Part shown: piece after piece, positions 17,722-62,593 of the stretch | How the letters are laid out: each line of letters starts with the position of its first letter | How positions within the stretch are numbered: the first letter of the stretch is position 1 | NCBI RefSeq assembly: GCF_000143415.4 | Contig: NW_003314290.1 | Coordinates: 434,001-498,000, forward strand | Origin: Selaginella moellendorffii | Taxonomy: Eukaryota > Plantae > Lycopodiophyta | Length of the DNA: 64,000 nucleotides | Direction: 5' to 3' | The notes under the pieces: model-generated | Told to the model about the DNA's origin: nothing | Seen by the model: only the letters and a program-made list of their open reading frames with translations | The model's database searches: none | Translations under genes and position numbers: made by a program

Positions 17722-17803
17722 GTGGATGTGCCGGAGTGGTTATCGGGCATGACTCGAAATCATGTGGGCTTTGCCCGCGCAGGTTCGAATCCTGCCATCC
17801 ACG
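17722..17803 (+). tRNA. tRNA-Ser(CGA)
   Basis: Acceptor GTGGATG/CATCCAC+G, anticodon arm CATGA-CTCGAAA-TCATG, long variable arm, GGTTCGAATCC T-loop, downstream T-run. Confidence 0.97.
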
Positions 17804-18476: not shown

Positions 18477-20379
18477 CACCGACGACGGCGACGTTGATTC
18501 CTGGTGGTGATCCACAGCTGCGTGGAGAGAATTCACTGCCTGAGGTGGCGTTGCGGTGGAGTCGAGTTCGTGATCTTGGTGCTGGCCTGCGAATGCGAAA
18601 GAAAACTCAGCAAAAGGATAAAATCAATCGCAACTCAAACTCCGAGGAAGAACAAACCGACCAGGAGAAAGCATTTCAATTCTCTCCCAGAAGCCAGTAA
18701 GCACAAGAAAAAGGGAGGGGGGGAAGAGAGAGAGAGAGAGAGGAAACAAAGAAGAAACCATACCTAGTAGATTCACTACGAACGCTGCTTCTCTCTCGGC
18801 AAAAAACGAAAGAACACCCAACTCCACAAAGGAGGAGAGAAATTTAAGCAAAGCACAAGGAGAGGAAGTCCCGCGGTCCCTGACAAGGAAAGAGAGGTCT
18901 GAGCCGCTGGAGCGCGAGTTAAATCGGCCCCACGGTACCGACAATCGCTGCCATCGCCGTTGCGTTGACGCACAGGACAAGACTTGCGCCCAAATCTAAA
19001 ACCCACCTCGTCGCGATCGATTGAATGCTCCCTTGCTCGTGTCTTGCCGCGGAGAAAGAATCAATCAACGCTCGCCGCGGTCGCGATTGCCTAAGAGGTA
19101 AAGTAGGTCTTTTGCCGCAGTAAACATGGTTAAAATTCCGAATTGTCGAGGAAAATGTAAAAGAAATATAATTAAAATAGAACCTAAGATAAAAAGTGGT
19201 TTAAGTTTTTCTTATAATAAATTATGTGAAGAGGCTAACCAAGTATTAAACATAGCAAAGGTGAATTATAAAGACTCTTGAATTTATCATTTTAGTGCAA
19301 GTATAGATGGATGCATGATGCTCATTTTGGAAACCATGGCAGAAATAGTTGACAGTAATATCGTAGCATGGCTATAATTTTAAGTGGTTTTTAATTAAAT
19401 TTTATAAAAGTAAGTGTAGCTAGTCTTTGGCTCTAATAATGGCTGAAACCAATTCACAATAAACACAATTTTGAAATTAGATTTTTATGACCATGATGAA
19501 TTTCTTTATGTAATTTGAGATTGACAATTGATTTATATATATATTTAATTAATTATAACTTTAATAAATGGTTTAATTTTTTAAAATTTACTACAAAATG
19601 TAAAACTTGTGATTCATTGTATTGGAGAGAACAATAGTAATTTTTAAAAATAATATTCTGTAAGCACAAATATATGGATAAAACCCTTCTTCTACAAAAT
19701 TATTTTTATGTTGTATATAACATTCCAAAAAGTAGAAATTTATAACATGACTAACTTTACTTATAAATATATATGATTGTATCAATTTTTTGGTTTGCTT
19801 AAACAAATCTGTAAGGGTAGTGGATATACCAAGAATATTCTTGGAAATTCTACGATATTCTACCATCTAAGGGTTGTTATTCATTTAGATTAATCTTGTG
19901 TTTATAAATTACAAACATGCTTATAATTATAAACTTTATTTCATCATTTGGATTAATAAGAAGGAATAACACCACTATTACGCAAACTAAGCATTGCTAC
20001 ATGCAACACGTAACAAATTATTAGTACTATAAATTAAATTATATAGTATTATTGTTAATTTTTTTTGTGACTATAAGATCAAAATATGAAAATTAAGATA
20101 CTAAATACTTATATAATAAAAAATATTTATCAAAAATAAAATTTTAATTTAATTTATATATTTTTATTTAATATAAATAATAGAGTGTGCTTAGCTAAGA
20201 ATAAATAAAAAAGAATAGGTTTCAATTGTTTTAGTAATAAATAAAAGAACAAAAACTAAATAAAACTTTATATTTAATTTTAAAGATAATCAAAATCTAA
20301 AATTTCATTATAATAAGATGTTAGTTTTACTACTTATATAAATTTTCCCGTGATAACTTAGTTTTTATCAAATATATAT

Positions 20380-20554
20380 TGTGAGTGCTTGGAATATGAA
20401 AAGGGAATATAGAAAATGTGCATATCAATTAGCCCAAAACCCTAGCTTATATACAGGAATAAGTGGTCCAGATTGAAACCAATCTGACAGCTACCAAAAT
20501 CTCATTATGATAATATTAGTATATGGCATTGTAGTTGTACACTTGGCCCTCACA
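20380..20554 (-). mobile_element. Solo LTR of the short-LTR Gypsy family (~175 bp)
   Basis: TGTGAG...CTCACA termini; ATAT on both sides (4-bp TSD); reverse complement of the copies at 20601, 33141 and 33514. Confidence 0.8.
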
Positions 20555-21249
20555 ATATCTATTACTTTGTAATATCAAAAATAATATTTTTATATACTAT
20601 TGTAAGGTGTATAATTACAATGCCGTATACTATTATTAGCATAATGGGATTTTGGTAGATGTCAAATTTGTTTCAATCCAAACCACTTGCTCTTGTATAT
20701 AAGCTAGGGTTTTTTGGCTAATTAATATATACATTTCTGTATTCTATTTTAATATTATACACTCACATTGGTGGAGATGAAGAGTAGTTGTGATTGTCTC
20801 TAAAAAATGCTTGGATTTGGAATTTTGTTTTAAATCTAGATTTTACATTGTCTAGATCTCCCTTTTCTTATAGCTTTTCTCAATTTTTATATTTTTTTTT
20901 TGTTCTTTCCTTTTTGTTCATCTTCATAGTAGAGTAGTAGCCTTCTCTTTCTTTGACTTTAGAGCAAAAACTGATGCAATTGCTTAATGCTATGTAGTTG
21001 CAGTTGAAGAATTAGACTTAGTTGATAGCAGCATATAATACAATGTTTTTTGCATTTACTACCAATCCTTGAGTCCGACTGGATGTTTTCTATAGGAATC
21101 ATAGGGATGATGTGTACCATTGGTTCAATCACTTCATAATGATTCCCATATATCATTCTTGGGATGATGTTTAGCATTTGTGTGAATTTTCCATATGTCT
21201 TCAAAAGATAGCACTACAATGGTATAATGGTTTGAGCATAGCCACTCCT

Positions 21250-21395
21250 AAAGATTGAAGCATTCTCCTAGATGTTTTCAAATGCACATTTGGACATGCT
21301 AACAATTCCGATAATGCCCTCTTAAAGATTGGAGCATTTTCTTAAATGTTTTCAAATGCATATTTGGACATGCCAACAATTCTGATGATGCTTTC
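21250..21395. repeat. Imperfect ~75-bp tandem duplication
   Basis: aaagattg(a/g)agcatt...atgttttcaaatgca(c/t)atttggacatgc(t/c)aacaattc occurs twice. Confidence 0.7.
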
Positions 21396-22635
21396 CAATA
21401 ATTATATTGTCTTCGTCAAAGGTTATGCAATTTGGCATTCTGTTTCAAAGGCTTTTACTTTGTGTAGAGTCAAATATGTTAAAATGGATCAAGTTGGGAA
21501 TGTTATACTTATCACTTTGTCAAAATCATGTACGACTTATGTATGCATTTGGTCCAGCCACCCTTGACAATGTTGTTCGTTTAACACAATGCTATGAGAC
21601 ATTTGTAAGTGACTAAATTTTTCCATTTTACTTTAGTCACTTAACCACACCTCCGACCACTTGGAGGAGTCTCACTCACAACCTTCTTAAGTCCAATTCA
21701 GGACTTGGGACTTGCTAGTCCCAAGAATGGCATCCATGCCACTCCTCCCTTGCACTTGGTCCAAGTGCTCCACGTGTCTAGTCCCAAGACCGATACCCAA
21801 AGGTACCACTGACATATTGGCCTGTTACGCTAAGGCCATGCCCATTCACCTTTGCCGCACTGGTGGGTCCAATACCACTTGCATCACCATCTCGTCTCTC
21901 CAAGACTAGGCCATCTATCCACAAGTGATTATCCCAGATCCACTCCTTAGCATCCTTAGGATGCCCACAGACATGGGGAATAGCCTTCCCCAACATCCCT
22001 TTGTCAGTTCCTGCCAAGTCCCTTTTCCGTCAATGGCCATGTTCACCAACACTGCCACTAGATCAAGGCCCGCAGGCCCGGCCACTAAGTCCCATTGTCC
22101 TCTGGGACTTCCTCACCATGTGACCGTATCCATAGTAACTACACTAGAGGATTGCTCCTCCTCCTTTCCCCCATTTGGGACTTCGGGACAACATTTTGGA
22201 ACACCGTGGCCCTACGTGAGCTCCGTGGGTACTCTCCCCACCTTCCGCCTTTAGGTGCTCTAGCCATGGGCTTAGAGCGAGGTTCCGTTGAGCCACACCA
22301 GGTATCCAAGTAGGTAGTGCCACCCACACTTGGACTGGGAGCATCGGCCAGTCGATCTCCCGGGGGAACTAGAGCCGGCTCTTGAACACTTCACCAAGCT
22401 ACCCTGCTTGTCAGTCCGTATTCACTCTAGTCTTGGACTTCCCAGTGGTCAATTCATCACCCAACACTGGGTCTGGCCTTCCTGGGCCAAACTGGCCTTT
22501 CCTGGCCAAACTGGCCTTTCCTGGCCAAACTGGCTCCACTGCAGTCCTCCCCCTTACTATACTTTTGGAGCTCACCAAACCCCTCAGGGTCTAGGAGACG
22601 AACGCTTTGGGCTTTCACCCTCTTAGACTCGAACA

Positions 22636-31547: not shown

Positions 31548-32010
31548 GAGTTGGGAGCACCACAGTCAGTTTCCCTTCCAAGAGTAGATGTTGCTTTTGA
31601 ACACTTCCTTAAGTGGCCCCTCTAGCACCACTTGAGTCCATCCTCACTCCCACCCAATGCCCCTAAGCCCCAATTTCAACCTCAAGTCAATTTGAAAGCA
31701 CCATTGGAGAGTTTCTTCGAGACTAATTCTTGGACTTCACTATCCCTACTATATTTTTGGAACCCCTTGCAGCCCCTCCCCCCTTGGGAGATACAGGCTT
31801 TGTGCTTTCACCCCATGATCTGTATTAGTATTCGAACTCGATCTTGGACTCAGTTTTGAACCCAATTTCGCATCTCAGACTCAGTCTCGAATTTGGTCTT
31901 GGACTCAGTCTTAAATTTGGTCTTAGAGTTGGTTTTGGACTCGATCTCGGACTTAGTCTGTAACTAAGTCTTATAATCGGTCTTGGACTTAATCTTGGAT
32001 TTGGTCTCAT
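31548..32010. mobile_element. Highly diverged relative of the long LTR
   Basis: Blocks tgggagca..., ttgaacacttc, ctactatatttttgga, ctttg(t/g)gctttcaccc followed by an eroded hexamer array, in the same order as 22330-22780. Confidence 0.6.
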
Positions 32011-32214
32011 CCGATGAACTTTTTAACATTTCGGTCGTGCTTTTTAGAGATTTTTTAACCTACGACACATTGGGGAGTTGGTTGTTTATAGCAATGTGAT
32101 ATTATCTGGTATGTGCATAATTATGTTTGGTGCTAAGCTCATAATACTCCCCCTTGTGCTACAAAAGGATGGATAGAGTTAATTGTAGTTTCCTATTCAT
32201 TTAAGTTGGTGGCA

Positions 32215-32920
32215 TTTGATTGGATGGAGCATTTTTCACAATCAACTACTGGCAATGAGTATATTATTATTGCTTATAACTATTTAACTCATAGGGTGGA
32301 AGTATGTGCTTTTATTAACATGTTTGCAACTACTATTGGATACTTCCTTCTCAATTGAGTAAAATTCCTATTTAGATAATGATCCCGCATTTATAGCTAA
32401 AGCATTTTATGTTTTGACATCTTGGTTGGGGATACACCACACTTTCACAAGTGGTTATCATCCATAATCAAACAGTTTGATGAAATGACTTGTTTGGACC
32501 TTCAAAAGGATGATTGTGAAATACATAAATTTTCAATATTCAAATTGGGATGGTTATTTTGCATCTCTTCGGTGTATATATGTCATAGGGGTGTAGAGTT
32601 TTATTGATGCTTTACCATATAAACTCCTATATGATTATAATCCAATACTACCAATAGAGTTGGGTTTACCTTTATGATTGTTATGAGTTACCAATGCTAA
32701 GTCATGATTAATATTTGAGAAATATTTTTCCACTTGTCCAAATAGAGTTTGCCGAACACTTAGGTTGTATACAAGTGGAATAACAACGACACTATAACTA
32801 TTGTCCACATGTAGAGTACAAAATGGATGATTTGGTATTAGTTTATTTTCTGAATCTTACAATATATATTTATTTAAAAGGCTTTTTGCTCAGTGGAAAG
32901 GACCATATTGAGTGTTGCGG
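32215..32920 (+). pseudogene. Gypsy integrase remnant
   Basis: Fragments DWMEHFSQSTTGNEYIIIAYNYLTHRVEV, LDNDPAFI, PYKLLYDYNPILPIE and WKGPY (GPY/F motif), interrupted by stops. Confidence 0.7.
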
Positions 32921-33513
32921 CAAATTGGACTACCAGTTTATGAGGTTTGGCATGACATCTAACAAGCTAATCCTCTAGAATTATACATGTGCAACAAGAG
33001 AAATGTTTTATACAAAGAAATTAGGAATAATTGGCACCACTTATAGATACACCAATACCTCCTCCTAATGTCTTTTAAAATCTCAACCCATCCAGAAAAG
33101 AATCTTGATGGTCTTTCATTATTCCAAGACGAAGTGATGATGTATAGTTCAAATATATAGCTACAATGCTATATACTAATATTCATATAGTGGGATTTTG
33201 GTGGTTATTGGATTTGTTTCAATTTGGACCACTCCCTTTTATATATAAGTTAAGGTTTTTGGGTTAATTAATATACACATTTCTGTATTCCATTTCCATA
33301 TTCCATGCACTCACACCATCTTTATAATTATAATGTTAGTATGTCAACATTTAAGAAATAATTTTGATGAGTTATATTATATTTGATTCTTATATAAAGC
33401 AAATAAAAAAATTTATTTATCATAGTATATATAATTTTACTTATGTCTTTGTATTTTACCAATTATTAATCCTGTATAGGTTATATTATATTTGAGTCTT
33501 CTAAAAATAATAA

Positions 33514-33688
33514 TGTGAGGGCCAAGTGTACGGTTACGATGCCGTATACTAATATTAGCGTAGTGGGATTTTGGTAGCCATCATATTGGTTTCAATGCGG
33601 ACCACTCGCTCCTGTATATAAACTAGGGTTTTTGGGCTAATTGAAATGCACATTTCTGTATTCCTGTTCCATATTCCATGCACTCACA
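33514..33688 (+). mobile_element. Solo LTR of the short-LTR Gypsy family
   Basis: TGTGAG...CTCACA termini; ATAA on both sides (4-bp TSD). Confidence 0.8.
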
Positions 33689-33953
33689 ATAACAAATTTT
33701 ACTTATTATAACACATATAATTTTATATATCTTTTTGCATTTTAGCAATTATTAATCCTGTATAAACATCAATCTTCACATATAACATTTTAAACTAAAA
33801 GGATATAAAATATTGACTTTAAATGTTTTCATATGAAAACTTCCTTTTGATTATAAAAAATGAAAAAATAATAAATCTTGCCAAAATGGTATAATTTGGC
33901 TTGGCAAGTTACATTTCCTTGTATCAAGGAAGAAAAGGAAGATGAAGAATCTC

Positions 33954-34304
33954 TCAAAATCTCGCCCTTCGAAACCTGTTCTTGAGCCAACCGATTACAC
34001 CACCACCCCTGGACAACGAACAAGACGAAGACTTTCGCCGCTGCTCCTCCCTGTGGCTGCCACTCCTGTTCATCACCGTCGAAGACTTTGCACTGCTGCG
34101 ATGGTGGTGGCCTTGGTGATCGTCGTCGCTGTCCAGAACCATGATCGTCTTCTTTGTGATCCCATCGCCCTTGCCGCCCCTGGTGTTGCTACTGCTAAAT
34201 CTCTGCGCCGGCTCCACCGCGTTGTTGAGGCCCAGCGAGTCGGCCCAGCTCCGCCCCGACGATCCCTGCCTCCTGATCGACACCCCCCGGCTGAGAGAAG
34301 CCAT
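33954..34304 (-). CDS. MASS-like small protein, copy 2
   Basis: MASLSRGVSIRRQGSSGRSWADS...GVIGWLKNRFRRARF*; close paralog of 18174-18476. Confidence 0.8.
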   Translation of the reverse strand: MASLSRGVSIRRQGSSGRSWADSLGLNNAVEPAQRFSSSNTRGGKGDGITKKTIMVLDSDDDHQGHHHRSSAKSSTVMNRSGSHREEQRRKSSSCSLSRGGGVIGWLKNRFRRARF

Positions 34305-35006
34305 TGATGGACGTCGATTGGTGGTGAATGGTTCTTCTTACGATGTTGTTGCGGTCGTGATCTTGGCGGTGATGGTACTGCCCTGCGAATCCGATTAAAG
34401 TAAAGCCAGATTCACGAGAAAACAGAAGGAACACAAAGCCGATCACATTTCATGTTTTCTACGAAGAAATGAGTTCTCTCCAAGAAGCCAGTTTAGATCA
34501 CAAGAGAGGAAGTGGAGTCTAGGAGACAACAGAGAAAACGTGTAAAAACAAACTTCTATCACTGGAACGCATCCAACACAGAGAGCTAAACGAACACTCC
34601 CACGGTACCTGACAGTGAAAGCAAATCCTGAGCGCGAATTTAAATCGGCACAATCGCTGCCATCGCCGCTGCCAGACTAGAAGACACACATCGGGATAAT
34701 TTCCTCTATACTGGAACTTCAGGCATAGAACCCTATTTTCTCGACCCAGAAAGCCGCCACCGCCACCGCGCTAGCTCGAATCCTCGCTTGTCGCTCGCCG
34801 CAAAGCAAGAGAGGCATTCTATAGATTGCCGCAAAGCAAGAGAGGCTAGTCTAGATTTAAGGGCATTGTCCTCGCTGTTGCGCGTAAGTCCCGGTCTAAA
34901 GCGACTGGGTGTTGCGTTGCATGTCAAACACCATTGTCGATGGCGGGCTTGTCGTGGAGCTATGCTGACTTGCAAGGTGAACGCATTGAGGAAGGTGGGA
35001 CGCAAT

Positions 35007-35088
35007 GTGGATGTGCCGGAGTGGTTATCGGGCATGACTCGAAATCATGTGGGCTCTGCCCGCGCAGGTTCGAATCCTGCCATCCACG
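35007..35088 (+). tRNA. tRNA-Ser(CGA)
   Basis: Same as the 17722 copy except one variable-loop base (gggctctgccc). Confidence 0.97.
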
Positions 35089-35395
35089 TATATCTTGCCA
35101 TTCCCTTTTTTTTGCTCCAATTGTTGCTTCTTCCATGTCCCTTGCTAGTGGCAATGGCCTGCGAGCTTGGTTTCGTTCTTCCTGGTGTTTTCTTTCGCGT
35201 TCTACAGCATGGAGTCTAATCAAAGCAAAGATCATGAGTGTTTACGTGGGCGATTCATGAAGAGAAGCGGGAAATCTTCGCGATCGTCTTGCCTCCACCA
35301 CCATCGCGAAGTCCTCGGTTTCTTCACTGGGAAGAGGTGGTGCCTTGAGAGTGGTCTACGATTTTGATGTCTTTCTTTTCAGATTCTAATGTGTT

Positions 35396-36129: not shown

Positions 36130-36477
36130 CTAAGTTCTAGAGATCTTTCTCATCCTCCCCTTGATCCAGCCAAGAACACCGTGATGAGATCTCTGGTGGA
36201 GATCGGTGGCGCCACCATCGAAGTCCCCTGGCGATCCCAACGCCGCCGATGCTCCTCCGGCCCCATGAGATCCTCCTCCAGTGCCGGACGAGCTGTGGTT
36301 GAGAGTGGAGGGATGAGACGAGGTCTCGTGATTGATGATCTCGCCGCCTTGTGCCCCGGATCCCAGCGCCCGAGACGTCTGGAACATCCCTTCCTCCGTG
36401 AATGCGCAGTTCTCGGCCCAGCTCAACCCCGACGATCCTTGCCTCCGGAAAGACACCCCTCGCTTGAGCGTCGCCAT
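36130..36477 (-). CDS. MASS-like small protein, copy 3
   Basis: MATLKRGVSFRRQGSSGLSWAENCAFTEEGMF...GVLGWIKGRMRKISRT*. Confidence 0.8.
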   Translation of the reverse strand: MATLKRGVSFRRQGSSGLSWAENCAFTEEGMFQTSRALGSGAQGGEIINHETSSHPSTLNHSSSGTGGGSHGAGGASAALGSPGDFDGGATDLHQRSHHGVLGWIKGRMRKISRT

Positions 36478-36719
36478 GGAAGACCCAAAGCAAAATAGCC
36501 ACGAGAATGCTATAGTACAATGTAGATATTGATGAGATCGAACTAAGATCAAGCTAGGGACAGAGATCGGAAAGCCATGAGTACAACAATGAAACAAAGA
36601 TCTTGTCTTCTTTTATAGCAAAACCATGTATTGACGGTCAATGAAAGTATATTCGATATGTTCGTAAAGTTAACCTAGTGGGAGTAAAATGTGTTTGTGC
36701 ATGTAGTTGACTGCAAGTT

Positions 36720-36801
36720 GTGGATGTGCCGGAGTGGTTATCGGGCATGACTCGAAATCATGTGGGCTTTGCCCGCGCAGGTTCGAATCCTGCCATCCAC
36801 G
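36720..36801 (+). tRNA. tRNA-Ser(CGA)
   Basis: Same sequence as the 17722 copy; T-run terminator follows immediately. Confidence 0.97.
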
Positions 36802-36883
36802 TTTTTCATTTTTTCTGCTTTGTATTTCTTCGATCTTGCTAAATTTTTTCATCTTTTTGATTCTAACGTTCCCGCAATGTGTT

Positions 36884-37222
36884 CTACGATTTAGATGCCT
36901 TTCTCGAAGAGATTCTTCCCTTGAGCCAGCCAAGAATGCTCCGGGATCGCGATTTCTGGCCTCCAGCGCCATCGCAATCCACCATCGCGTCCGCGCTGCG
37001 AAATTGGAGATGCTTCATCGATCCTCCCCCGTGGCCAGTGCTAGCGCTGCGACCAAGCGTGGCAGGATGCTCACGATTTGTGATCATCTGATCGCCCCTC
37101 GCAATTGCAGCTTTGGATTGATTGTGGAACATCCCCTCCTCTGTAAACGTCCAGTTCTCCGCCCAGCTCAATCCCGAAGATCCCTGCCTCCGAAACGAGA
37201 CGCCTCTCTTGAGCGTCGCCAT
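36884..37222 (-). CDS. MASS-like small protein, copy 4
   Basis: MATLKRGVSFRRQGSSGLSWAENWTFTEEGMF...LGRSAST...ILGWLKGRISSRKASKS*. Confidence 0.8.
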   Translation of the reverse strand: MATLKRGVSFRRQGSSGLSWAENWTFTEEGMFHNQSKAAIARGDQMITNREHPATLGRSASTGHGGGSMKHLQFRSADAMVDCDGAGGQKSRSRSILGWLKGRISSRKASKS

Positions 37223-37700
37223 GGGGAAACAAATCCAGCAAAAATTTCTGTCAAGAACGATGAGATTTCGGCAGGAATCGCTAGAAAAGATGGAGTTTCT
37301 GAGGGAGGAAGCGAAGAACCCTACCGAAGAAAGCAATGGATCGCGCTCTCGTATTTGTTATAGCAGCCTACGTGGCACTATAGCAGGCATGGCACGATGA
37401 CGAATATAGAGTGATATAATCACGTCAAGCGTAGCTTGTTTCCATCGTCCAATTCAATGAACGTTTGTTGTTGAGGGTCATGGATGTCGAGCACCATGCT
37501 AGAGATTTTCTTTTAGATTTTTGTTGTATGGAACTGGTAGTTGATAGTGTGGTGGTTCCTGTGACTAGATTTAAAGTCATTTCAAGCCTGCCAAACTCAT
37601 GATTGGTATGAGCATATTCCTGATTTTTAATGGTTATGTATAATCTAAATTAAGCTCCAATAATCATTGAACTAGGTAATAATTAAATTTATAATGTGAT

Positions 37701-37772
37701 GTCGTTGTAGTATAGTGGTGAGTATTTCCGCCTGTCACGCGGACGACCCGGGTTCGATCCCCGGCAACGGCG
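37701..37772 (+). tRNA. tRNA-Asp(GTC)
   Basis: GTCGTTGTAGTATAGTGGTGAGTA...CTGTCAC...GGTTCGATCCCCGGCAACGGCG, the canonical plant tRNA-Asp pattern; T-run follows. Confidence 0.96.
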
Positions 37773-37829
37773 CAAATATTTTTTTTCTTTAGTAGATTCA
37801 GTATGCTTATTACGATATTTAGGGTTTAA

Positions 37830-39613
37830 ATGATTGACAGACTACTCAGAGCGCGCCCAGAGAAATTCGGGTCAATTGTGGACAATGCGGCTGATTTCCG
37901 ATTCCAGGTACAATTTTCCGAGGTTGCCGAGGACGAGATCGGCACTCCCTGCCTTGTTCGCCATGGATTCCGTGCTGGATCCGAGTATTTCTATCCAGCC
38001 AGGTATAAGTTCTTGTTTTCTTATTGTGAGATCTTGTTTAAATGGATGTTTTGCAGTGCTATAAAATTCTGTGGAGTGATAGCAGCATTGCTAAAACTCG
38101 GACGCGTCAGGGAGACTATGGGTTCGCCATACTCTTTCTTGTTAGCACTTGAAACTTTTTTTTGTTGATTTTCCACAGGACCTGGGATTTCCTGTTCTAG
38201 TGCTCTCCAGTTTTATCCTTTAAACGAAGGAGGACTTTTGGAGCAATATGATGCGAGCAATCTGGATGGCCAAAGGATCACTGTTGCTCATGAGCTTCGA
38301 AAGCTATTCCTGGTATTCGTTTCTTTGGATATATCTTTCATTTCATCCTTCTCATATAAATGTGTTGTTGACAGGCCTCGGACAATCGAGCTTTCAATCG
38401 GCTGTATGATTTTGTTGGCCACCGCTGGCTGAACGAGACAATGTGAGCGTTTTCAAGCAGCAGCATGACAAAAGAAAAAAAAACACACAAACAACTTTCG
38501 GATACACTGTAGGTGGCACGCAAATCTTCCCAGCGCAAGGCTTCGCCATCACCTCGCAGGAAATTTCTCGTCGTCCAGTGGCATGAACATTACTTGCAGA
38601 CCGGTTGGATTCGAAGAGCGCGCTGCTGTTCCTCCGAAACGGAGTGGTCTAACTCTGCCAGGAAACACTCCCTCGCAGGGACTGCAAGTAGGGAACGCTT
38701 ACATCGCAGATGGAAGCTTGGTAACTATTCATCCATTCTCTTCTTTCCGATCGGAAAACTCTTCTAAGAAATGACTTGCCAGGTGAACGAGCCCATGGAT
38801 TTCTCCGGGAAGAACTCCATCAGCCTTCTCGACCTCCAAAACCTCTTGATCAAAGTCACCCGACCGGACATCCACGTAAGTTTGCGTCTGTAAAATCAGT
38901 TTATATATCGCTCACGCTTTGGCTGCTGTATGAATGAAGTTAGATAATTCTCCTCTCGATCTGGACGAGGAAACATCAAAGCTGCTAATGGAAGCAATGT
39001 CTCAGTATCCAGCCGAGTCCTCCAATCCTCAGTACTATCACTACCCGGACGATTTTTGCAAGGTGAAGAACCATCTTATCTAGTTTGATCGTCTCATCGC
39101 AAAGAGTTCCTTGCAGCTGTTCTTGCCGGGGCTATGCCGGGTGCGCAGCAAAGGAGCTCTGCGGATTTACAACAAAGTTGGCCAGGCATTTGGCTTCACA
39201 ACCGAGAACGCGTAAGCAGCTCTTGCGATGGTTTTCCTAGTTTCGCGAAATCCTTCTCTCGCAGCTATGTCGTCGACGTAGAAACCGGGAGGAGCTTCTT
39301 CCTGGCCGCAACGATCTATACAAACGCAAACGGGGTTGTCAACGATGATCGCTACGAGTATGGCATTGCAGAGACGGTGATGGCGGATCTCGCCGAAGAG
39401 ATCGCTCGAGCAGTGTGGCAAATCCCGCCAGAGATCGTCAATCTGGATTGCACGCCATCAAGGCAGCAGCAGCGCGAAAAGATCGAGTCAAATGCTCGGC
39501 AAACGAGCCAAGCGACAGAGAAACCGCGAGATCTTCCATGCAAGTTGGAAGATCCAGCGAAATTCTCGTCGCGCGCGGCGAAATCTTCGTATGTTTACTT
39601 TGTCGATGAGTAA
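37830..39613 (+). CDS. Serine hydrolase with class A beta-lactamase/PBP-type motifs, multi-exon
   Basis: Spliced translation gives YFYPAS|AIK (SxxK), ASDNRAFNRLYDFVG (SDN), IYNKVGQAFGFTTENA|YVVD (KxG) and FFLAATIYTNANGVVNDDRYEY, with GT-AG introns. Confidence 0.78.
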
Positions 39614-39658
39614 CGCTCAAATTTTCATCTTGGCGGGCCTAGGTTTAGGGTTTATGCG

Positions 39659-42144
<2,486 letters not shown>

Positions 42145-43656: not shown

Positions 43657-45435
43657 GTCGAAAACAAGGGCAAAATTTTGAGCGGGAATGCCTCACAACA
43701 ACGAATAGAACGATGCCGCGTGGAAGATTTTAAATAGAAGAGTTAGATTAAACGGTTTTCTACTGTAAACTGAGGGGATTCTTCCTGGAAATCCATTCTA
43801 GCGACAACTTTGCCATCTCGTGGACATTATTACGTGGGAAGCGCACGGGGTGTTTGATCTCTTAGAGCATTCGGATCTGGAATGGCTCCTGTGCATTTTC
43901 CTTGTGGATATACAAACAATGACGTGGACACCAAGTGTTAATTTACTCAAAATGTAATGCAAAGACATATATATATATACATATACATATATATGTGTGT
44001 GAATATTACAAACCTTCCCCTTTGAAAGAAGTAAAGTACTTTACCCTTATCTGAAGAAAATAAGGTAAATAAAAGAAAATAAGAAAAAATTAAGGAAAAA
44101 ATAAAGAAAAATTAGCAATTGTCAAAGCATAAATAGGGAAATAAGAAGGAGGCTTCTTATTTTAAAAGACTCTATAAAATAAAATGCCAAATAATAGTAT
44201 AAAGTATTTCGGCCAATACAAGATAAGTAAAAAGATTTACATCATTCAACTTGTTCAACACATAACTCAACATTTAAGAAAAAACAATCAAAGACTTTGC
44301 TAACAAAATAAAAGCAAAACTCTCAACTTAAACACACCTTACATTTAAATTAGTATGAGGAGAATGTAATCTCTTAGATATTTAGGGTTAAAAGTTTATA
44401 GAGTTCAAAATTTAAAGACCCTTAAAGAAAGGGGGTGCATTGTTGTTTATGAATTCTTTTCCTTTATATTTGAATTTGAATTGATTATTTTTTAATTTGT
44501 TCTTTTTAGTTATTTATAAAGTACATAAACACTCAATTCAACATTGAATTAAGAATAGAATCACAAAAGACAAAATTGGTTAAGATGCTAGAAGAAGAAA
44601 ATGCTGCAAATAAAAAAGAAATATTATGAATTTGCAGGAAAGGTTGGGAGATTAAAAAAAGGATAAGAAAGAGCAAAAGACAAAGTAAAAGAATTATATG
44701 GTTGATTAAAGGATTGACATCTACCTTGTGAAATCTTTAATTGATCTTCAAAGCTATCATCAAAATAATTAAATTCTTTATTAGCAAGAGTTCACTCAAA
44801 TTTGTAAATATTGTCTTCCTATTCAATCTAAACATCCTCTAAAAATCTGATTACATCATTTATAACTCTGTAATCAATGTTTTAATCACAATCGCAAAAT
44901 CAGAAAACACTAAAAATAGGAAAAAAAATATATAATCACATTCCATGGAAACTAAAGATAACAAAACATCAAAAATTGAAATAGTATCAACAAAATCATG
45001 CCACACAAACACTAAAAGCTTGATTTGAAAAGAATTCATTTGCAAGAACAATTGCCAAATGGCAACAATGATGTATTAACTACAACCTCCAATCATACAC
45101 TCTTTAATTGAACACTGCATAGTATGGCAGAAGAAAAAAATGCAATGAAGATCAAAGGAAAAATAGATAAATAATTATAAATCTTCAATCTGGCAAAAAA
45201 CTAATATAGGTTTAGATCAAGGGATAAGAATAAATCACAATTCGTAATACTAAGTACTTTTCAGAGATTATCTTCAACACCACTTACCTTCACCTGAATT
45301 GAATAAATATTTTAATTAGGTGGGGTTTAGACCCGTCCATATATATAGTAATGGATAGACCAAATTTAATCTCACCAACTATATTATTATAATTAGCATG
45401 TTTACTAGCAATTTAATGGTAAACTTTTGCTAAAC

Positions 45436-46975
45436 TATGATTGCAAAGGCAGCGGTGTGTCAAGGTAAAGATGCCGTGCTAGCTTGAGATTTCAAGGGCC
45501 TGAGCTATTAGGCAAGTATCTTCAAGACAGCGAAGAACACTCTTTAGGCCTTTGTGTTATCTGCCTTGATGAGGTAAGCCTCCAGTTTCGTTTGTTCCGA
45601 CGCTCAAGCAAACGTTTATCCAGGAGGATTCTTTGTGTTCAAAACGAGGGACTGATCGTGTTGTGAACCGATTTTTGGTGGAGATGGACGGTTTGCAAGA
45701 GTTGAATGATGTGATTGTCGAACAGGACTTCTCTACTCTATACCAATTAGAGTTTGTATCTAACCTTTTTTGCTCTATGTGCTTTTCAAGGATTGAGGCA
45801 GTGGAGCTTTCACTGTGGACACGCGAGCCTCTTCATCGGGAAGAGGTATTCGGACATGGTGGCCAAGCCGTCCTGGACGAAGGAAAGCCTTCTCACGCTT
45901 AAGAGGCTTTTGGCAGCTGGAGTTGATCTGGCCAAGCTCGCAAAATCAGCTCAGCTCGAAGGCTTGAGCGGGAGTCATCTCTCCGAGCTCGTGAGTTCCC
46001 CGGTTTTGCTTCTTGGAAGTTGATGGGAAAACTCCTGTGTGTTTCTTTCAGGTTGAGCACTGCTGAAATCTGCCAGCGTCACTTCGAGACGGCGCGCGAG
46101 AAATTGGGGAAGCGTTTAGCCAGAGTTGCAAGCGTCGATAACAATCGAAGGTGTTCCAATGCGTGACGGCTCTATGACAAATTTGCGTGCCTATTGCCAA
46201 GTCACGAAATTTTGTTCGTCCACTGAAAGATGGAAGCAATAAACAATTAACCTTAAGAGTCGAGACATAGATATAAGCCACCTGGAAAGTTTCCTGTGTA
46301 GAAAAAGGATACAATCTCATTGCGAAGATTTGTAGGCCCGTAGATCGAATCCCAGCCGATTCTCGGTATTTCTTCTCAGAAGGCACCCTTTGAAGCGCGC
46401 CTCCTGGACAAAACAGAGATTTTGCCTCGTCTCGATCAAAATCTGCCAGATTTACCATGAAATCTTCCAGATCGGCCCCATGGACCCCTTGGCGGAGGCT
46501 TCCCCCATGCGCTTCCAAATTGTTCCTATCTATAGCGCGCAAACCTGCCGAGTCGTTGCACAGCTTCTTGAGCTCTTCCGCATTGTAGCCCGCGGTGGCG
46601 ATCACTGCCGCATCGACGCTGAAACCCGGCGAAATCCCCTCATCGGCTGCACGATCAGCGCCTCGATCGCTTGCCTCCTCGCCTTGGCGGAGAGAAGGGA
46701 TTGTAGGGCAAACTTTTGCGCGGGAACACAACGAATAAACTGGTGCCGCGTGGAAGATTTTAAGAGATAGAGTTAAGATTAAATTCTAGCTCTCGTGTCG
46801 CATCATTGACGGATTCCCATCTCATGGATATTCTAGCGACGACTTTGCGCCATGCGAGGCACTTCATCTGCTAGAGCATTCCGATCCGGAATAGCGCCCG
46901 TGCGTTTTTCTCGTGGATATACGGTGCCCGATCAACAATGACGTGGACAGTAAGTGTTAATTTACTCCAAATGTA
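45436..46975. pseudogene. Decayed duplicate of about 41250-43960 (3' half of the NVL-like gene plus the 5' part and promoter of the degenerate AAA gene)
   Basis: Shared blocks GPELL(G/R)KYL, VNxFLVEMDGLQEL, LAAGVDLAKLA..LEGLSGSHLSEL, FSVDAAVIATAGYNAEELKKLC and upstream aacaatgacgtggaca..aagtgttaatttact, with deletions and frameshifts. Confidence 0.85.
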
Positions 46976-47328: not shown

Positions 47329-49799
47329 ATGGATGCATGGTCTACTCTCTCAATTTTGCTACTGCTGCTGCTAGTAGCGCCAGACGTGCATGGAAAATTC
47401 CTGGTGGAGAAGAACAGTCTCAGCGTGACCTCGCCAGATTCGCTCAAAGGCACGTACGATAGCGCTATTGGGAATTTTGGTGTTCCACAGTATGGTGGGA
47501 CTATGGTTGGAACTGTGACTTATCCGAAGGATTCGAGGATGGCATGCAAACCGTACAGTGATTCCGATACTTTCAGGAGGAAATCCGGTGGGCTTCCCAA
47601 CGTGGTGCTTGTCGATCGAGGAGGTGAGCTCACGATTCTTTGCTCACTTCTACTAAATTTTTCTCTCCAGATTGTTACTTCGCTTTGAAGGTTTGGAACG
47701 CACAAAACGCTGGAGCGGCTGCTGTACTGGTTGCGGATGATAGAACCGAGCCTCTGATCACCATGGACTCTCCAGAGGAGGACTCTGCGGCGTCCGAGTA
47801 CGTGGAAAACATCACGATCCCTTCGGCTTTGATCGAGAAAAGTTTCGCGGATAAGCTCAAGAGGGCTCTCTCGGACAACGAGATGGTGAACATCAACCTT
47901 GACTGGAGGGAGTCGCTTCCACATCCGGACGACAGGGTGGAATACGAGTTCTGGACCAATAGCAACGACGAGTGCGGACCGAAGTGTGATGCACAGAAGG
48001 AATTCGTGAAGAACTACAAGGGAGCAGCACAGATTCTTGAGCGAGGTGGCTACACACTTTTCACTCCTCACTACATTACCTGGTACTGTCCTCAAGCGTT
48101 CATCTTGAGTAAACAGTGCAAGTCCCAGTGCATCAATCATGGACGATACTGCGCGCCGGATCCAGAACAAGACTTTAACCGGGGCTACGATGGAAAAGAT
48201 GTAGTGGTAGAGAATCTCAGGCAGCTCTGCGTTTTCAAGGTTGCTACCGAGGAGAGGAAACCATGGGTATGGTGGGACTACGTTACTGATTTCCAGATCC
48301 GGTGTCCTATGAAGGAGATGAAGTACAATGAGGCTTGCGCGGAGGACGTTCTCAAGGCTTTGGGTAAGAACCTGCTTGTCTTCACTTATTTCACTGAAAA
48401 CTGTTTCTAATGTTGGCCTCTTCTAGATATTCCTGTGCACAAGGTGCGCGACTGTATGGGGAATCCAAACGACGACAAGGATAATGCTGTTCTGAAATCC
48501 GAGCAAGACGCTCAGGTTTGTGGTGTCTAATAGGCATAATTTTCTCTTACATTCGAAGCACAGGTGGGACATGGCAGCCGTGGTGACGTTACCATTTTGC
48601 CAACACTAATAGTGAATAACAGGCAGTATAGAGGTATCACTAGAGTCCTTGGAGAGTCTTACTGATATATCTTTGGTGCAGGCAAGCTGGATAAAGCCGC
48701 GGTGCTGAAAGCTATTTGTTCGGGTTTCCAAGAAACTACAGAGCCAGCCGTCTGTTTGAGTGAAGGTAGATTCCGATCATTCAAGGACTCTTCCGTTGAA
48801 GCTTTTTTCAGATATGCAAACAAACGAATGCCTTACGAACAATGGGGGATGCTGGCAGGACAAGAGCGCGAACGTCACCGCATGTAAAGTAAGTTATCAG
48901 ATTTTATTCTTGTTTGCAGTCAGCTTTTTCGTCTTTGCAGGATACTTTCCGTGGAAGAGTGTGCGAGTGTCCCATTGTGCAAGGCGTGCAGTACAGCGGA
49001 GATGGATACAGTCACTGTGAAGGTACTTGTGAAATCTATCTTCTCTGTGATAGTTCTAATGTCCTGCGTTGTTTAGCTCTCGGACCTGGGAGATGCAAAC
49101 TTAATAATGGAGGATGCTGGCAGCATACTCGAAACGGTGTAACTCATACAGCATGCTCGGTAAGAAAATTATCTAGCAGGACTCTTTACAAACAAAGTTT
49201 ACGCATGCAGGATAGACAATTGAAAGGATGCCAGTGCCCCTCCGGTTTCAAGGGAGACGGTTTTAACACTTGCGAAGGTGAGCACAAACCAAAAAGCTTT
49301 CAACGTTCTTATATAAGTTCCCGTGATTCTCTCCCCAGACATCGATGAATGTCGTGAGCGCGTCGCCTGCCAGTGCCCGGATTGTACTTGCAAGAACACT
49401 TACGGTAGCTATGACTGCTCCTGCAGCGGTGATCTTCTTTACATGCGAGAACACGATACTTGCATAAGTAAGTTCCTTGGGATGTTTCCACAGGCTTGAT
49501 TTTATTGGTTTCTTTCGCTTTCCAGGCAAGAAAGGCTCCACCGCGAAAGTTGGCTGGGTTGTCATCTTCACTGTTCTTGGTGGACTCTCAGCTGCCGCTA
49601 TCGCTGGCTACGTTGTTTACAAATACAGGCTCCGGGTAATATCAATTCGTGCTCGCTTGATCCAGCAAAACTTAACGTTCTCTACTGGAAACTTTTCCTG
49701 TAGTCTTACATGGATTCGGAGATTAGAGCTATCATGGCACAGTACATGCCGCTCGACAGCCAAAACGACGTGCATCACCACTTGCAAGAGGATGCTTGA
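47329..49799 (+). CDS. VSR: Vacuolar sorting receptor (BP-80/VSR), multi-exon
   Basis: [23 protein letters not shown] domain, [18 protein letters not shown] repeats, TM segment, [17 protein letters not shown] tail. Confidence 0.96.
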
Positions 49800-59500: not shown

Positions 59501-60394
59501 TCAGAACACATTTGGAGGCAATCTAGAGTAGACCTCCTGGTACCGAAGGAACTCAATCTTGATCCAGTAGAGATCAACCGTGAAGTGGTCTCCACAGTAG
59601 CTGAGAATGGCCTCCAAATCTCCGGCACCCCCAAGCACCTTGGCGGTGTCAAGCTCGATCTGGTAGCCCGGAATGCCCGGTCGATCACAGTCGACACCGC
59701 CATGCCCAACCCCGCTGAGCAAAATCCCCTGCTCTTCAACCAGCCACGCGACAGTCACGGGATGAAGCGCCTCCTCCCCAAACGAGATGGCTCTCGCCGT
59801 GATACCATCACCCGCGTCGTCTCGCTCGAACAACACCGCCACCATCTGCCTCATGCGCGTCTTCAAGTAGCACTTGAGCGCCAGGAAGATCTGGACCTTG
59901 GAGCCGGGGCTATGGAAGTAGGCGTCCTTGTAGGAGAGGAGCTCGGGCAGCGTCTGGCACTGTCCAACGTCGAGGATGAATCGCGGCCATGGGAAGCAGC
60001 CAGTCTCGGGCTCGAGCAGGTGGAGAGCGTCATGGTGGGCTTGCAAGCTCGCGAACTTGATGTTTCCACTTGGGGGATAGGCGAATCGGAGGTACTCCAC
60101 CATCCAGATCCAGTTTAGCGCCGGTCGGAAGCACCTCTGAACATAAGCAGTGATAAAAGATTGGTGTTTCCGCTCCACGGCAACAACTTTGCCGCCAGGG
60201 CGTACCACGCACGACGCCCCTAGCTTCCATAGCTCGCGGTAGCGCACGAGCTTGGCTGTGGTCCAGCGCTTACCCAGCACGCACTCTTCGCGGTTGTTCC
60301 ATGCCTCCCAGTCGAGGTCGTCGTCGTGCTCCGCCTTGCGCTCCACTGCCTCGAGCGCCCGCTTCAGCACCGCCTCAAACGACTCTCGCGGCAT
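59501..60394 (-). CDS. Intronless 297-aa protein, Uma2/Crinkler-REase-like (PD-(D/E)xK fold)
   Basis: GC-rich single ORF; WPRFILDVGQCQTLPEL..YF..VQIFLALK..MVAVLFER..ISFG..LSGVG..CDRPGIPGYQI pattern. Confidence 0.6.
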   Translation of the reverse strand: MPRESFEAVLKRALEAVERKAEHDDDLDWEAWNNREECVLGKRWTTAKLVRYRELWKLGASCVVRPGGKVVAVERKHQSFITAYVQRCFRPALNWIWMVEYLRFAYPPSGNIKFASLQAHHDALHLLEPETGCFPWPRFILDVGQCQTLPELLSYKDAYFHSPGSKVQIFLALKCYLKTRMRQMVAVLFERDDAGDGITARAISFGEEALHPVTVAWLVEEQGILLSGVGHGGVDCDRPGIPGYQIELDTAKVLGGAGDLEAILSYCGDHFTVDLYWIKIEFLRYQEVYSRLPPNVF

Positions 60395-61963: not shown

Positions 61964-62593
61964 TGTAGTGCACCTTATTTCTCTCCCCTTAAGCCAACTG
62001 AAAAAGGGGCAATTGCTTGATGAAAGAGCCCTTAATGACTATTTTATTTGAATTTATCCAAAATTCCAACGATCCATGGGTAACAGTATATTCAAATTTC
62101 ATCTCATGATCATATGCGCTACACTCACCCCCTAAGCCCTTAATGACTATTTTATTTCCCTAAGCCTTTAATGACTATTTTATTTCCATTTATCCAAAAT
62201 TCTAAAGATCCATGGGTAATAGTATATTCAAATTTCATCTCATGATTATATAATCACCCCCCTTTAGAAATGTCAATGTACTCATTGACTATTGGGTACA
62301 AAAGGAAGGATTCAATATGTACAATTTTAAATTTTAGGGGTAGAAATATACTTTGCTCAAGGGTATATTATATTTTTAAGTAGCCACTAATCAATGAGAA
62401 TCGAACCCATACCATTTGCTCTAATACCACATATAACTCACTTTATCTCTCTCCCCTTAAGCCAACTGGAAAAGGGGCAATTGCTTGATAAAAGAGCCTT
62501 TAGTGGCCATTTTATCCCCATTTATCCCCTAAAGTTCCAAGGATTTACAATAACAATATATCCAAATTTTATCTCATGATCACATGCGTTACA
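61964..62593 (-). mobile_element. TRIM (miniature LTR retroelement)
   Basis: Two ~160-bp direct repeats (61964-62123, 62432-62593); minus-strand PBS TGGTATTAGAGC (iMet type); PPT AGGGGGTGAG; flanks tttat/cttat; no coding capacity. Confidence 0.78.

What the first reader, a model, noticed from the sequence alone, without database searches (positions are those of the whole stretch)
37830..39613. Intron-containing plant gene with the class A beta-lactamase/PBP catalytic motif set
Seen: after splicing, the protein has FYPAS-AIK (the catalytic Ser codon is split by an intron), SDN and NKVG in the correct order, so the ORF track hides it. Known: SxxK, SxN and KT/SG define penicilloyl-serine transferases. 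The blocks FNRLYDFVG, IYNKVGQAFGF and FFLAATIY.N.NG..NDD.YEY recall uncharacterised bacterial (Bacteroidota-type) serine hydrolases, from memory. Seed-free plants retain plastid peptidoglycan machinery that is sensitive to beta-lactams. Inference: a domesticated bacterial gene that may hydrolyse beta-lactams or D-Ala peptides. No transit peptide is evident at the apparent start.
Basis: partly seen in the sequence, partly recalled or inferred. Interest (0 to 1): 0.8.

Follow-up and report, generated by a model that had tools for sequence, protein, structure and literature searches.

The report
Ancient bacterial-type penicillin-binding-fold gene in spikemoss
This is a real, transcribed nine-exon gene of the spikemoss Selaginella moellendorffii for an enzyme with the fold of bacterial penicillin-destroying and cell-wall-trimming enzymes. 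The green plant lineage took the gene from bacteria very long ago and kept it from green algae to ferns and Ginkgo, and its function is still unknown.

Summary
Window 37830-39613 (+) is a nine-exon GT-AG gene of 435 codons. All eight splices, including the one that splits the catalytic Ser codon (AG|T), appear in intron-less transcript contigs from four separate studies.

The spliced protein is identical to residues 191-621 of RefSeq XP_024536539.1 (Selaginella moellendorffii). It passes Pfam PF13354 Beta-lactamase2. Its predicted structure (pLDDT 89.5) matches class A beta-lactamases and the cyanobacterial DD-peptidase PBP-A at Z 22-23.

S-x-x-K, S-D-N and K-V-G are present. The position of the class A deacylating Glu166 aligns with a conserved Leu, as in PBP-A, so it is probably not a true beta-lactamase.

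This is not a recent transfer. Relatives occur from Prasinoderma, Mesostigma and Klebsormidium to mosses, lycophytes, ferns and Ginkgo, and no angiosperm was seen. Intron positions are shared as far as Klebsormidium, and four as far as Cymbomonas. One green-lineage clade is not rejected (AU p 0.65).

The closest bacterial relatives (Planctomycetota, Acidobacteriota; 45-48% identity) are exported proteins encoded directly downstream of lysA.

The plant proteins lack any presequence. Those of Chara and land plants also have a C-terminal extension ending in Y-x-Y-F-V-D-E. The function is untested.

The parts
37830..38002 (+). Exon 1. The start codon ATG is at 37830, directly after an in-frame TAA. 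The exon ends with AG, the first two bases of the catalytic Ser codon.
   Evidence: A transcript contig begins at 37818 and is colinear through this exon. The N-terminus aligns with the start of the mature bacterial proteins.
38057..38121 (+). Exon 2. Its first base T completes Ser (S-A-I-K). The Lys codon is at 38064-38066.
   Evidence: The joint 38002|38057 is seen in 4 of 4 runs. This intron position and phase are shared with Physcomitrium, Diphasiastrum and Klebsormidium.
38179..38312 (+). Exon 3.
38375..38442 (+). Exon 4, carrying S-D-N (38378-38386) and the block FNRLYDFVG.
38513..38720 (+). Exon 5. It carries the omega-loop-like segment WHANLPSARLRHHLAGNFSSSSGMN (38514-38588), which has no Asp or Glu. 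The Leu at 38553-38555 aligns with Ambler position 166.
38783..38875 (+). Exon 6.
   Evidence: The other allele reads GAC instead of CAC at the last codon.
38940..39062 (+). Exon 7.
39117..39211 (+). Exon 8, carrying K-V-G (39174-39182) within IYNKVGQAFGF.
39265..39613 (+). Exon 9. It holds the last core strands and helix (FFLAATIYTNANGVVNDDRYEY). From about 39425 it encodes the plant-only C-terminal extension, ending in SYVYFVDE (39587-39610), followed by the stop codon at 39611-39613.
   Evidence: The extension is disordered in the model, with pLDDT below 50 for model residues 399-425.

Best explanation
This is an expressed nuclear gene of Selaginella moellendorffii. It encodes a soluble serine acyl-enzyme hydrolase with the class A beta-lactamase / PBP-A fold and no organelle presequence.

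It descends from one very old bacterial acquisition by the green lineage and has since been inherited vertically. It is retained in green algae, bryophytes, lycophytes, ferns and at least Ginkgo.

Proposed mechanism (inferred, not shown):
- Ser58 (Ser54 in the fold model) at the start of helix 2 is activated by Lys61 and by Ser126 of the S-D-N loop.
- It attacks an amide (peptide-like) carbonyl held against the K308-V-G strand, forming an acyl-enzyme.
- The position of the class A water-activating Glu166 is a Leu, so the enzyme should behave like a penicillin-binding DD-peptidase of the PBP-A type. That means turnover of a D-Ala- or diaminopimelate-type peptide, and slow or no turnover of beta-lactams. 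It should not behave like a beta-lactamase.

Shown here: the gene structure, its expression, the family, the fold, the motifs, the distribution and the shared introns. Inferred: the substrate class and the cellular location.
For: Gene and RNA: a nine-exon open frame, with all eight joints in transcript contigs of four studies.

Identity: the exon translations equal P0270:191-621, which is XP_024536539.1 of S. moellendorffii.

Family: PF13354 scores 26.8 bits against a cutoff of 22. Bacterial relatives score 56 bits.

Fold: the AF2 model has pLDDT 89.5. The listed Foldseek matches (top 50 of at least 500 with E <= 0.001) are class A beta-lactamases, BlaB or PBP-A. VIA gives Z 23.3 for LRA-5 and 22.9 for PBP-A, against 15-18 for DD-peptidases of other classes.

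Motifs: S-x-x-K, S-D-N and K-x-G are conserved in every full-length green-lineage protein.

Position 166: the family's H-R-L Leu aligns with L158 of PBP-A and with V166 of LRA-5. The hhalign alignment to TEM ends at L162, and extending it without gaps puts Leu on E166. PBP-A is a DD-carboxy/endopeptidase that lacks the omega-loop Glu (PMC11189452).

Ancient vertical descent:
- Green-lineage sequences lie outside a bacterial clade with 99% SH-aLRT support.
- A single green clade is not rejected (AU p 0.646).
- Eight of eight intron positions and phases are shared with Diphasiastrum, seven each with Physcomitrium and Klebsormidium, and four with Cymbomonas.

Link to cell-wall or diaminopimelate metabolism in bacteria: lysA (TIGR01048, above its cutoff) abuts or overlaps the gene upstream in 12 of 22 loci, and an M23+LysM peptidase gene lies upstream in a Bacteroidales locus.

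No presequence: residue 1 onward aligns with the mature bacterial domain and folds at pLDDT 96.
Against: - No activity was measured, and no substrate is known for any member of this subfamily, bacterial or plant.
- The third motif is K-V/I-G, not K-T/S-G, so the usual hydroxyl contact to the substrate carboxylate is missing.
- The assignment of Leu to position 166 rests on sequence-profile alignments of a variable loop. I could not superpose coordinates.
- The Selaginella omega-like loop departs from the family consensus: H-R-L-S-E...E-E-N becomes H-H-L-A-G...G-M-N.
- A cytosolic location does not fit a role on plastid peptidoglycan, which lies between the envelope membranes.
- Adjacency to lysA is only guilt by association.
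Confidence: 0.6

Rival explanations
1. It is a true beta-lactamase that protects the beta-lactam-sensitive plastid division machinery by destroying antibiotics in the cytosol.
For: It has the class A fold and the acylation motifs. It sits on the path an antibiotic would take to the plastid. Its distribution roughly matches plants that keep plastid peptidoglycan (PMC4815162).
Against: No acidic residue aligns with Glu166 in any green-lineage member, and the 31-residue loop (model residues 146-176) of the Selaginella protein has no Asp or Glu at all. Among its closest structural matches, LRA-5 (Z 23.3) and PBP-A (Z 22.9) both lack Glu166 and are poor or inactive beta-lactamases (PMC12777564, PMC11189452). 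NCBIfam bla_class_A gives only 24-35 bits against a cutoff of 200 for the bacterial relatives. Physcomitrium, which has an orthologue, still forms macrochloroplasts on ampicillin at 100 ug/mL (PMC9434261).
Confidence: 0.08
2. It is a serine hydrolase of this fold that acts on something unrelated to peptidoglycan, such as an ester, a D-amino-acid amide or another small amide in cytosolic metabolism. The fold was re-used, as it is in family VIII esterases and D-amino-acid amidases.
For: The protein has no targeting sequence. K-V/I-G replaces K-T/S-G. About 120 residues of insertions, including extra beta-hairpins at model residues 174-213, remodel the cleft. Esterases, acyltransferases and D-amino-acid amidases share the fold at Z 15-18.
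Against: The class A / PBP-A group stands clearly above those enzymes (Z 22-23 against 15-18). The bacterial homologues are exported and sit next to lysA or an M23+LysM peptidase gene, which points to the cell envelope.
Confidence: 0.22
3. It is a non-turnover binding protein: a sensor or scaffold that uses the cleft, and perhaps covalent acylation, to bind a ligand. The conserved C-terminal tail would mediate partner binding.
For: Chara and the land plants share a C-terminal extension with conserved D-C-x-P-S-S-x-W and terminal Y-x-Y-F-V-D-E motifs. The Selaginella omega-like loop has lost residues conserved elsewhere.
Against: All acylation residues are strictly conserved over the whole green lineage. 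The allele comparison is weak but leans towards purifying selection: 8 synonymous changes over about 305 sites against 7 non-synonymous over about 1000 sites. No partner is known.
Confidence: 0.08
4. It is bacterial contamination, or a recent lineage-specific horizontal transfer into Selaginella.
For: Identity to bacterial proteins is high (45-48% over 85% of the length).
Against: The gene has eight spliceosomal introns that are removed in RNA. It is flanked by a nuclear tRNA-Asp gene and an AAA ATPase gene. There are two alleles. Intron positions are shared with a moss, another lycophyte, Klebsormidium and Cymbomonas. The green-lineage clade is not rejected.
Confidence: 0.01

Closest known systems
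PBP-A (Tll2115) of Thermosynechococcus elongatus, a class-A-like DD-carboxy/endopeptidase (PDB 2J7V; PMC11189452)
   Same: Same fold (VIA Z 22.9, 244 residues aligned, rmsd 3.1). It has S-x-x-K and S-D-N. A Leu at the Glu166 position aligns with the family's conserved Leu.
   Different: Only 18% identity, and the profile E-value is 0.004. The plant protein is about 120 residues longer in the core, has K-V-G instead of K-T-G, has no signal peptide, and carries a plant-only C-terminal tail. Its activity is untested.
Class A beta-lactamases (TEM, CTX-M, BlaC; Pfam PF13354 Beta-lactamase2)
   Same: It passes the PF13354 threshold. The listed Foldseek matches (top 50 of at least 500 with E <= 0.001) are class A enzymes or their close relatives. 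The acylation motifs are in the same order and on the same secondary-structure elements.
   Different: There is no Glu at position 166. Identity is 12-17%. The NCBIfam class A equivalog threshold is missed by a wide margin. The protein is eukaryotic, intron-bearing and not exported.
LRA-5, a metagenomic class A 'precursor' (PDB 8EO5; PMC12777564)
   Same: It is the best structural match (Z 23.3) and the best PDB sequence match (E 2e-4). It naturally lacks Glu166 and confers no resistance.
   Different: It is a 290-residue exported soil-bacterial protein, only 17% identical, with no plant relatives.
Uncharacterised bacterial 'serine hydrolase' lipoproteins encoded downstream of lysA in Planctomycetota and Acidobacteriota (for example loci L001-L003)
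   Same: This is the true sequence family: 45-48% identity over 85% of the length, and the same conserved blocks along the whole protein.
   Different: The bacterial proteins have signal peptides or lipoboxes and no C-terminal extension. They keep H-R-L-S-E...E-E-N in the omega-like loop, which Selaginella has changed. No member has a tested function.

Membership tests
Pfam PF13354 Beta-lactamase2 | Whole-protein score at or above the gathering threshold (22 bits) | tested here: met
   P0270:191-621 scores 26.8 bits, E 3.8e-6, covering profile positions 17-212 of 214. Single exons alone gave nothing.
Ambler class A beta-lactamase | Ser70-x-x-Lys73 at the N-terminus of helix 2 | tested here: met
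   S-A-I-K sits at model residues 54-57, at the start of helix 53-75.
Ambler class A beta-lactamase | Ser130-Asp-Asn loop | tested here: met
   S122-D-N124 lies between helices 111-121 and 124-134.
Ambler class A beta-lactamase | Glu166 in the omega loop, the general base for deacylation | tested here: not met
   The family Leu (L157 in the model) aligns with PBP-A L158 and LRA-5 V166 and, by ungapped extension, with TEM E166. Model residues 146-176 of the Selaginella protein contain no Asp or Glu. The alignment is by sequence profile only; coordinates could not be superposed.
Ambler class A beta-lactamase | Lys234-Thr/Ser-Gly on strand beta3 | tested here: inconclusive
   K304-V-G306 lies on strand 299-308. 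Lys and Gly are kept, but the hydroxyl residue is replaced by Val or Ile in nearly all plant members.
Ambler class A beta-lactamase | NCBIfam bla_class_A equivalog score (cutoff 200 bits) | tested here: not met
   The closest bacterial relatives score 24.5 and 35.5 bits. The Selaginella exons give no hit.
Ambler class A beta-lactamase | Hydrolysis of beta-lactams with turnover | not testable with these tools
   This needs a nitrocefin or penicillin assay on purified protein.
PBP-A-type class-A-like DD-peptidases | Class A fold with a non-acidic residue at position 166 | tested here: met
   Z 22.9 to 2J7V. Leu aligns with Leu158.
PBP-A-type class-A-like DD-peptidases | Sequence membership in the cyanobacterial PBP-A family | tested here: inconclusive
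   The profile E-value is 0.004 and identity is 18%. No cyanobacterial member turned up among the 22 genome loci or the named hits.
PBP-A-type class-A-like DD-peptidases | DD-carboxypeptidase or DD-endopeptidase activity, and penicillin binding | not testable with these tools
   Biochemical assay needed.
Plastid peptidoglycan machinery of plants | N-terminal plastid targeting sequence | tested here: not met
   The first residues align with the mature bacterial domain and are part of the fold. An in-frame TAA precedes the ATG, and a transcript contig starts at 37818.
Plastid peptidoglycan machinery of plants | Co-occurrence with the peptidoglycan pathway across plants | tested here: inconclusive
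   Named in 18 algal, bryophyte, lycophyte and fern species plus Ginkgo, and in no angiosperm. Some eudicots keep most Mur genes (PMC4815162), so the match is not exact. No formal profile was computed.
Gene of bacterial origin fixed in the green lineage | Broad bacterial family; eukaryotic members form one clade restricted to one lineage and have spliceosomal introns | tested here: met
   The donor lineage is not resolved.

The most novel reading that the evidence does not exclude
The green lineage has kept, for about a billion years, a cytosol-facing PBP-A-like DD-peptidase that works with plastid peptidoglycan and was lost in angiosperms. It might, for example, trim or clear DAP-type muropeptides or D-Ala-D-Ala precursors outside the stroma, or process bacterial muropeptides. 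The C-terminal Y-x-Y-F-V-D-E tail, shared by Chara and the land plants, would dock it to a partner at the envelope.
Probability: 0.18. Interest if true: 0.75.

Novelty: new variant of a known kind. Interest (0 to 1): 0.55.

Why it matters
Plastids of algae, bryophytes, lycophytes, ferns and some gymnosperms still build a peptidoglycan layer, yet the enzymes that trim or remodel it are largely unidentified.

This gene family is a conserved, expressed protein with the penicillin-binding fold. Its distribution resembles that of plastid peptidoglycan retention. Its bacterial cousins sit next to the diaminopimelate decarboxylase gene. I found no study of it in the searched literature. It can be tested directly by knockout in Physcomitrium.

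It is also a clean example of a bacterial gene that entered the green lineage before the chlorophyte-streptophyte split, because the shared introns date its residence in the nucleus.

If it has nothing to do with peptidoglycan, it is simply one more old bacterial-type hydrolase in plants.

Tried and rejected
- Exon-by-exon scans against Pfam, NCBIfam and PDB sequences gave nothing, because the exons are too short.
- The protein-atlas look-up of exon 9 gave only leads: Bacteroidota fragments, and PF13354 at 0.86.
- A weak tblastn hit at window 47835-48065 (-) is noise, not a paralogue. No motif is kept.
- The first related-loci query was too short.
- hhalign of the family profile against TEM stops just before the omega loop, so position 166 rests on the PBP-A and LRA-5 alignments plus an ungapped extension.
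- Complex prediction of the catalytic domain against the C-terminal 37 residues returned no answer (score 0.00). This is neither for nor against docking of the tail.
- Literature searches for this plant family found nothing specific.
- Accession EU935739 was not held; NC_013122 was used instead.
- The idea that the gene is absent from all seed plants was rejected when a Ginkgo fragment appeared.
- The RefSeq N-terminal extension (P0270:1-190) was considered and set aside. It translates straight through a tRNA-Ser gene, has no Pfam match, and is not supported by the four transcript contigs.
Full report
**The observation.** Reading the DNA and marking the GT-AG boundaries gives nine exons: 37830-38002, 38057-38121, 38179-38312, 38375-38442, 38513-38720, 38783-38875, 38940-39062, 39117-39211 and 39265-39613. 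The introns are 53-70 nt long. The spliced frame stays open for 1308 nt, which is 435 codons plus the stop. S-D-N is in exon 4 and K-V-G is in exon 8. The finding's coordinates are exactly the start and stop codons.

**RNA evidence.** I laid contigs from four runs of four different studies of the same organism on 37600-39900 (2301 letters, within the operators' limit). Every one of the eight joints was seen at the predicted GT..AG borders. One contig of 1340 nt runs from 37818 to 39621 and therefore holds the whole coding sequence.

These runs are only guessed to be RNA. Contigs that lack all eight introns are nonetheless what spliced transcripts look like.

A second allele is visible, with 15 single-base differences and an in-frame 12-nt insertion after 39441. 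Of the 15 differences, 8 are synonymous and 7 are not, over about 305 and 1000 sites respectively. This is weakly consistent with purifying selection.

- Single exons gave no Pfam, NCBIfam or PDB match.
- Exon 9 found 22 bacterial loci.
- In the large protein search, exon 9 found P0121 and, through its cluster, P0270. These are RefSeq XP_024528841.1 and XP_024536539.1 of Selaginella moellendorffii.
- Every exon translation lies, in order and without a mismatch, in P0270:191-621. All later whole-protein work used that stored record.
- Inside one local script the exon DNA was concatenated, only to classify the allele differences.

**The RefSeq model.** P0270 has 190 extra N-terminal residues taken from window 36476-37357. 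Residues 18-38 are the literal translation of a tRNA-Ser gene and match all three copies in the window. That part has no Pfam match. None of the four transcript contigs shows the splice it needs, and two of them run colinear through the proposed acceptor. An in-frame TAA stands directly before the ATG at 37830. I therefore take 37830 as the start.

**Family and fold.**
- P0270:191-621 passes PF13354 Beta-lactamase2 at 26.8 bits against a cutoff of 22.
- Full-length bacterial relatives (L001-L003, about 410 residues) score 56 bits. They align colinearly over all the Selaginella exons, with summed E-values of 1e-52 to 1e-54 for L002 and L003.
- An AlphaFold2 model built from 60 aligned sequences has mean pLDDT 89.5 and pTM 0.87.
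- The listed Foldseek matches (top 50 of at least 500 with E <= 0.001) are class A beta-lactamases, BlaB or PBP-A.
- The independent VIA search gives Z 23.3 to LRA-5, 22.9 to PBP-A and 22-23 to other class A enzymes. DD-peptidases of other classes, esterases and class D enzymes follow at 15-18.
- The core is about 120 residues longer than a class A enzyme, mostly through extra hairpins at model residues 174-213.

**Active site.** Ser54 and Lys57 start helix 53-75. S122-D-N124 lies between helices. K304-V-G306 is on strand 299-308. These motifs are kept in every full-length green-lineage protein.

The class A hallmark Glu166 is another matter:
- In the profile alignment to PBP-A, the family's conserved H-R-L Leu falls on Leu158. 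That is the residue PBP-A has where class A enzymes have Glu166.
- In one of the two alignments to LRA-5, the same Leu falls on Val166.
- The hhalign alignment to TEM ends at Leu162, and extending it without gaps again puts the Leu on Glu166.
- In Selaginella the whole segment between the end of helix 6 and the next strand (model residues 146-176) has no acidic residue.
- In Selaginella the loop also departs from the family consensus: H-R-L-S-E...E-E-N becomes H-H-L-A-G...G-M-N.

PBP-A is a DD-carboxy/endopeptidase that lacks the omega-loop Glu (PMC11189452). Wild-type LRA-5 confers no resistance (PMC12777564). I could not superpose coordinates, so the position-166 assignment is an inference from sequence profiles.

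**Distribution and age.** Named relatives come from the following:
- Green algae: Prasinoderma, Cymbomonas, Mesostigma, Chlorokybus, Klebsormidium, Chara, Spirogloea, Mesotaenium.
- Bryophytes: Physcomitrium, Ceratodon, Sphagnum, Calypogeia.
- Lycophytes: Diphasiastrum.
- Ferns: Adiantum, Ceratopteris.
- Seed plants: Ginkgo.

With a plant-only profile, every hit above 500 bits is one of these or an unnamed transcript. The bacterial hits begin directly below, and no angiosperm name appears. The lists are cut at 120 rows and many clusters carry no name. Absence from angiosperms is therefore likely, not proven.

In a tree of 70 sequences, the land plants plus Zygnematophyceae form a clade with 97% support. 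The other algae are unresolved beside it. All sampled Planctomycetota and Acidobacteriota form a separate clade with 99% support. Holding all 18 green-lineage rows together gives a better likelihood than the free search found, and is not rejected (AU p 0.646).

All eight Selaginella intron positions and phases recur in Diphasiastrum. Seven each could be resolved in Physcomitrium and Klebsormidium, including the intron inside the Ser codon. Four recur in the chlorophyte Cymbomonas. The gene was therefore in the nucleus before chlorophytes and streptophytes diverged.

**Bacterial context.** The bacterial proteins start with signal peptides, several with a lipobox Cys.

In 12 of 22 loci, all from Acidobacteriota or Planctomycetota, the gene directly upstream on the same strand abuts or overlaps the start of the hydrolase gene. 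It scored above the TIGR01048 lysA (diaminopimelate decarboxylase) cutoff in all eight loci scanned, and the other four were identified by tblastn with two of those proteins. Two further loci are cut off upstream. In a Bacteroidales locus the upstream gene encodes an M23 peptidase with a LysM domain. This ties the family loosely to the cell envelope and to diaminopimelate metabolism. It does not name a reaction.

**Features specific to the green lineage.** The green-lineage proteins start where the mature bacterial domain starts. In Selaginella these first residues are part of the fold at pLDDT 96, so there is no room for a transit peptide.

After the last core helix, Chara and the land plants carry an extension of variable length. 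It is disordered in the model and ends in [C/S]-Y-x-Y-F-[V/I/L]-D-E. It often also contains D-C-x-P-S-S-x-W, which Klebsormidium has as well. One unnamed eukaryotic transcript has a hydrophobic tail there instead. A docking test of the tail on the domain gave no answer.

**Reading.** The best-supported account is an old bacterial-type, PBP-A-like serine acyl-enzyme hydrolase that now works without export. It is more likely to turn over a D-Ala- or DAP-type peptide, or another amide, than beta-lactams. Physcomitrium carries an orthologue and still shows macrochloroplasts on ampicillin (PMC9434261), which argues against an effective beta-lactamase. The main rival is a substrate unrelated to peptidoglycan. 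Contamination and recent transfer are excluded.

**Novelty.** UniProt already labels the moss, Klebsormidium, Cymbomonas and Sphagnum proteins 'Beta-lactamase class A catalytic domain-containing protein', so the fold assignment is not new. I found no paper on the plant family in the searched library. As far as I can tell, the following have not been described before:
- the conserved introns, which date the acquisition;
- the Leu at position 166;
- the lysA linkage in bacteria;
- the missing presequence;
- the conserved C-terminal tail of Chara and the land plants.

Other agents of this scan had already named this genome as Selaginella moellendorffii on other windows. I confirmed that independently.

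Noticed in passing
window 36476-37357 (RefSeq model P0270 residues 1-190): The RefSeq model of this gene (XP_024536539.1) has a 190-residue N-terminal extension. It is translated through a tRNA-Ser(CGA) gene and lies antisense to a small minus-strand ORF (36884-37336). It looks like an annotation artefact.
   Followed up: partly
window 37701-37773; also 17722-17803, 35006-35089, 36719-36802: A tRNA-Asp(GTC) gene lies only 57 nt upstream of the start codon. Three tRNA-Ser(CGA) copies lie further upstream, part of the repeated cassette noted earlier for this window.
   Followed up: no
window 39621-39660: Gene spacing is very tight. Transcript contigs of this gene end at 39621-39627, and contigs of the next gene begin at 39638-39639. 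That gene is an AAA ATPase with a GPPGCGKT motif and an ATG at 39659.
   Followed up: no
L001-L003, L005-L008, L011-L014, L017 (about 500-1950 in each locus): In Acidobacteriota and Planctomycetota the serine-hydrolase gene is preceded by lysA (diaminopimelate decarboxylase), with abutting or overlapping stop and start codons. This looks like a conserved two-gene unit across two phyla.
   Followed up: partly
L025:1501-2964: The liverwort Calypogeia fissa orthologue is a single uninterrupted ORF of 487 codons, although it groups with land-plant sequences that have eight introns. It may be a retrocopy or a case of complete intron loss.
   Followed up: no
P0138 (EukProt transcript, species not named): This relative ends in a hydrophobic stretch (VPVILGVSVAVNVALVLVILS) instead of the Y-x-Y-F-V-D-E tail, which suggests a tail-anchored version.
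   Followed up: no
window 20001-22000, 32001-34000, 44001-46000, 60001-64000: There are blocks of 27-37% G+C in a window that otherwise averages about 49%. They are probably repeat or transposon remnants.
   Followed up: no
L015, L018, L021 (Fibrobacterota and Bacteroidales members): These distant bacterial members have lost the Lys of the K-x-G motif (F-N-V-V-G or I-N-V-A-G), so part of the bacterial family may not be catalytic in the usual way.
   Followed up: no
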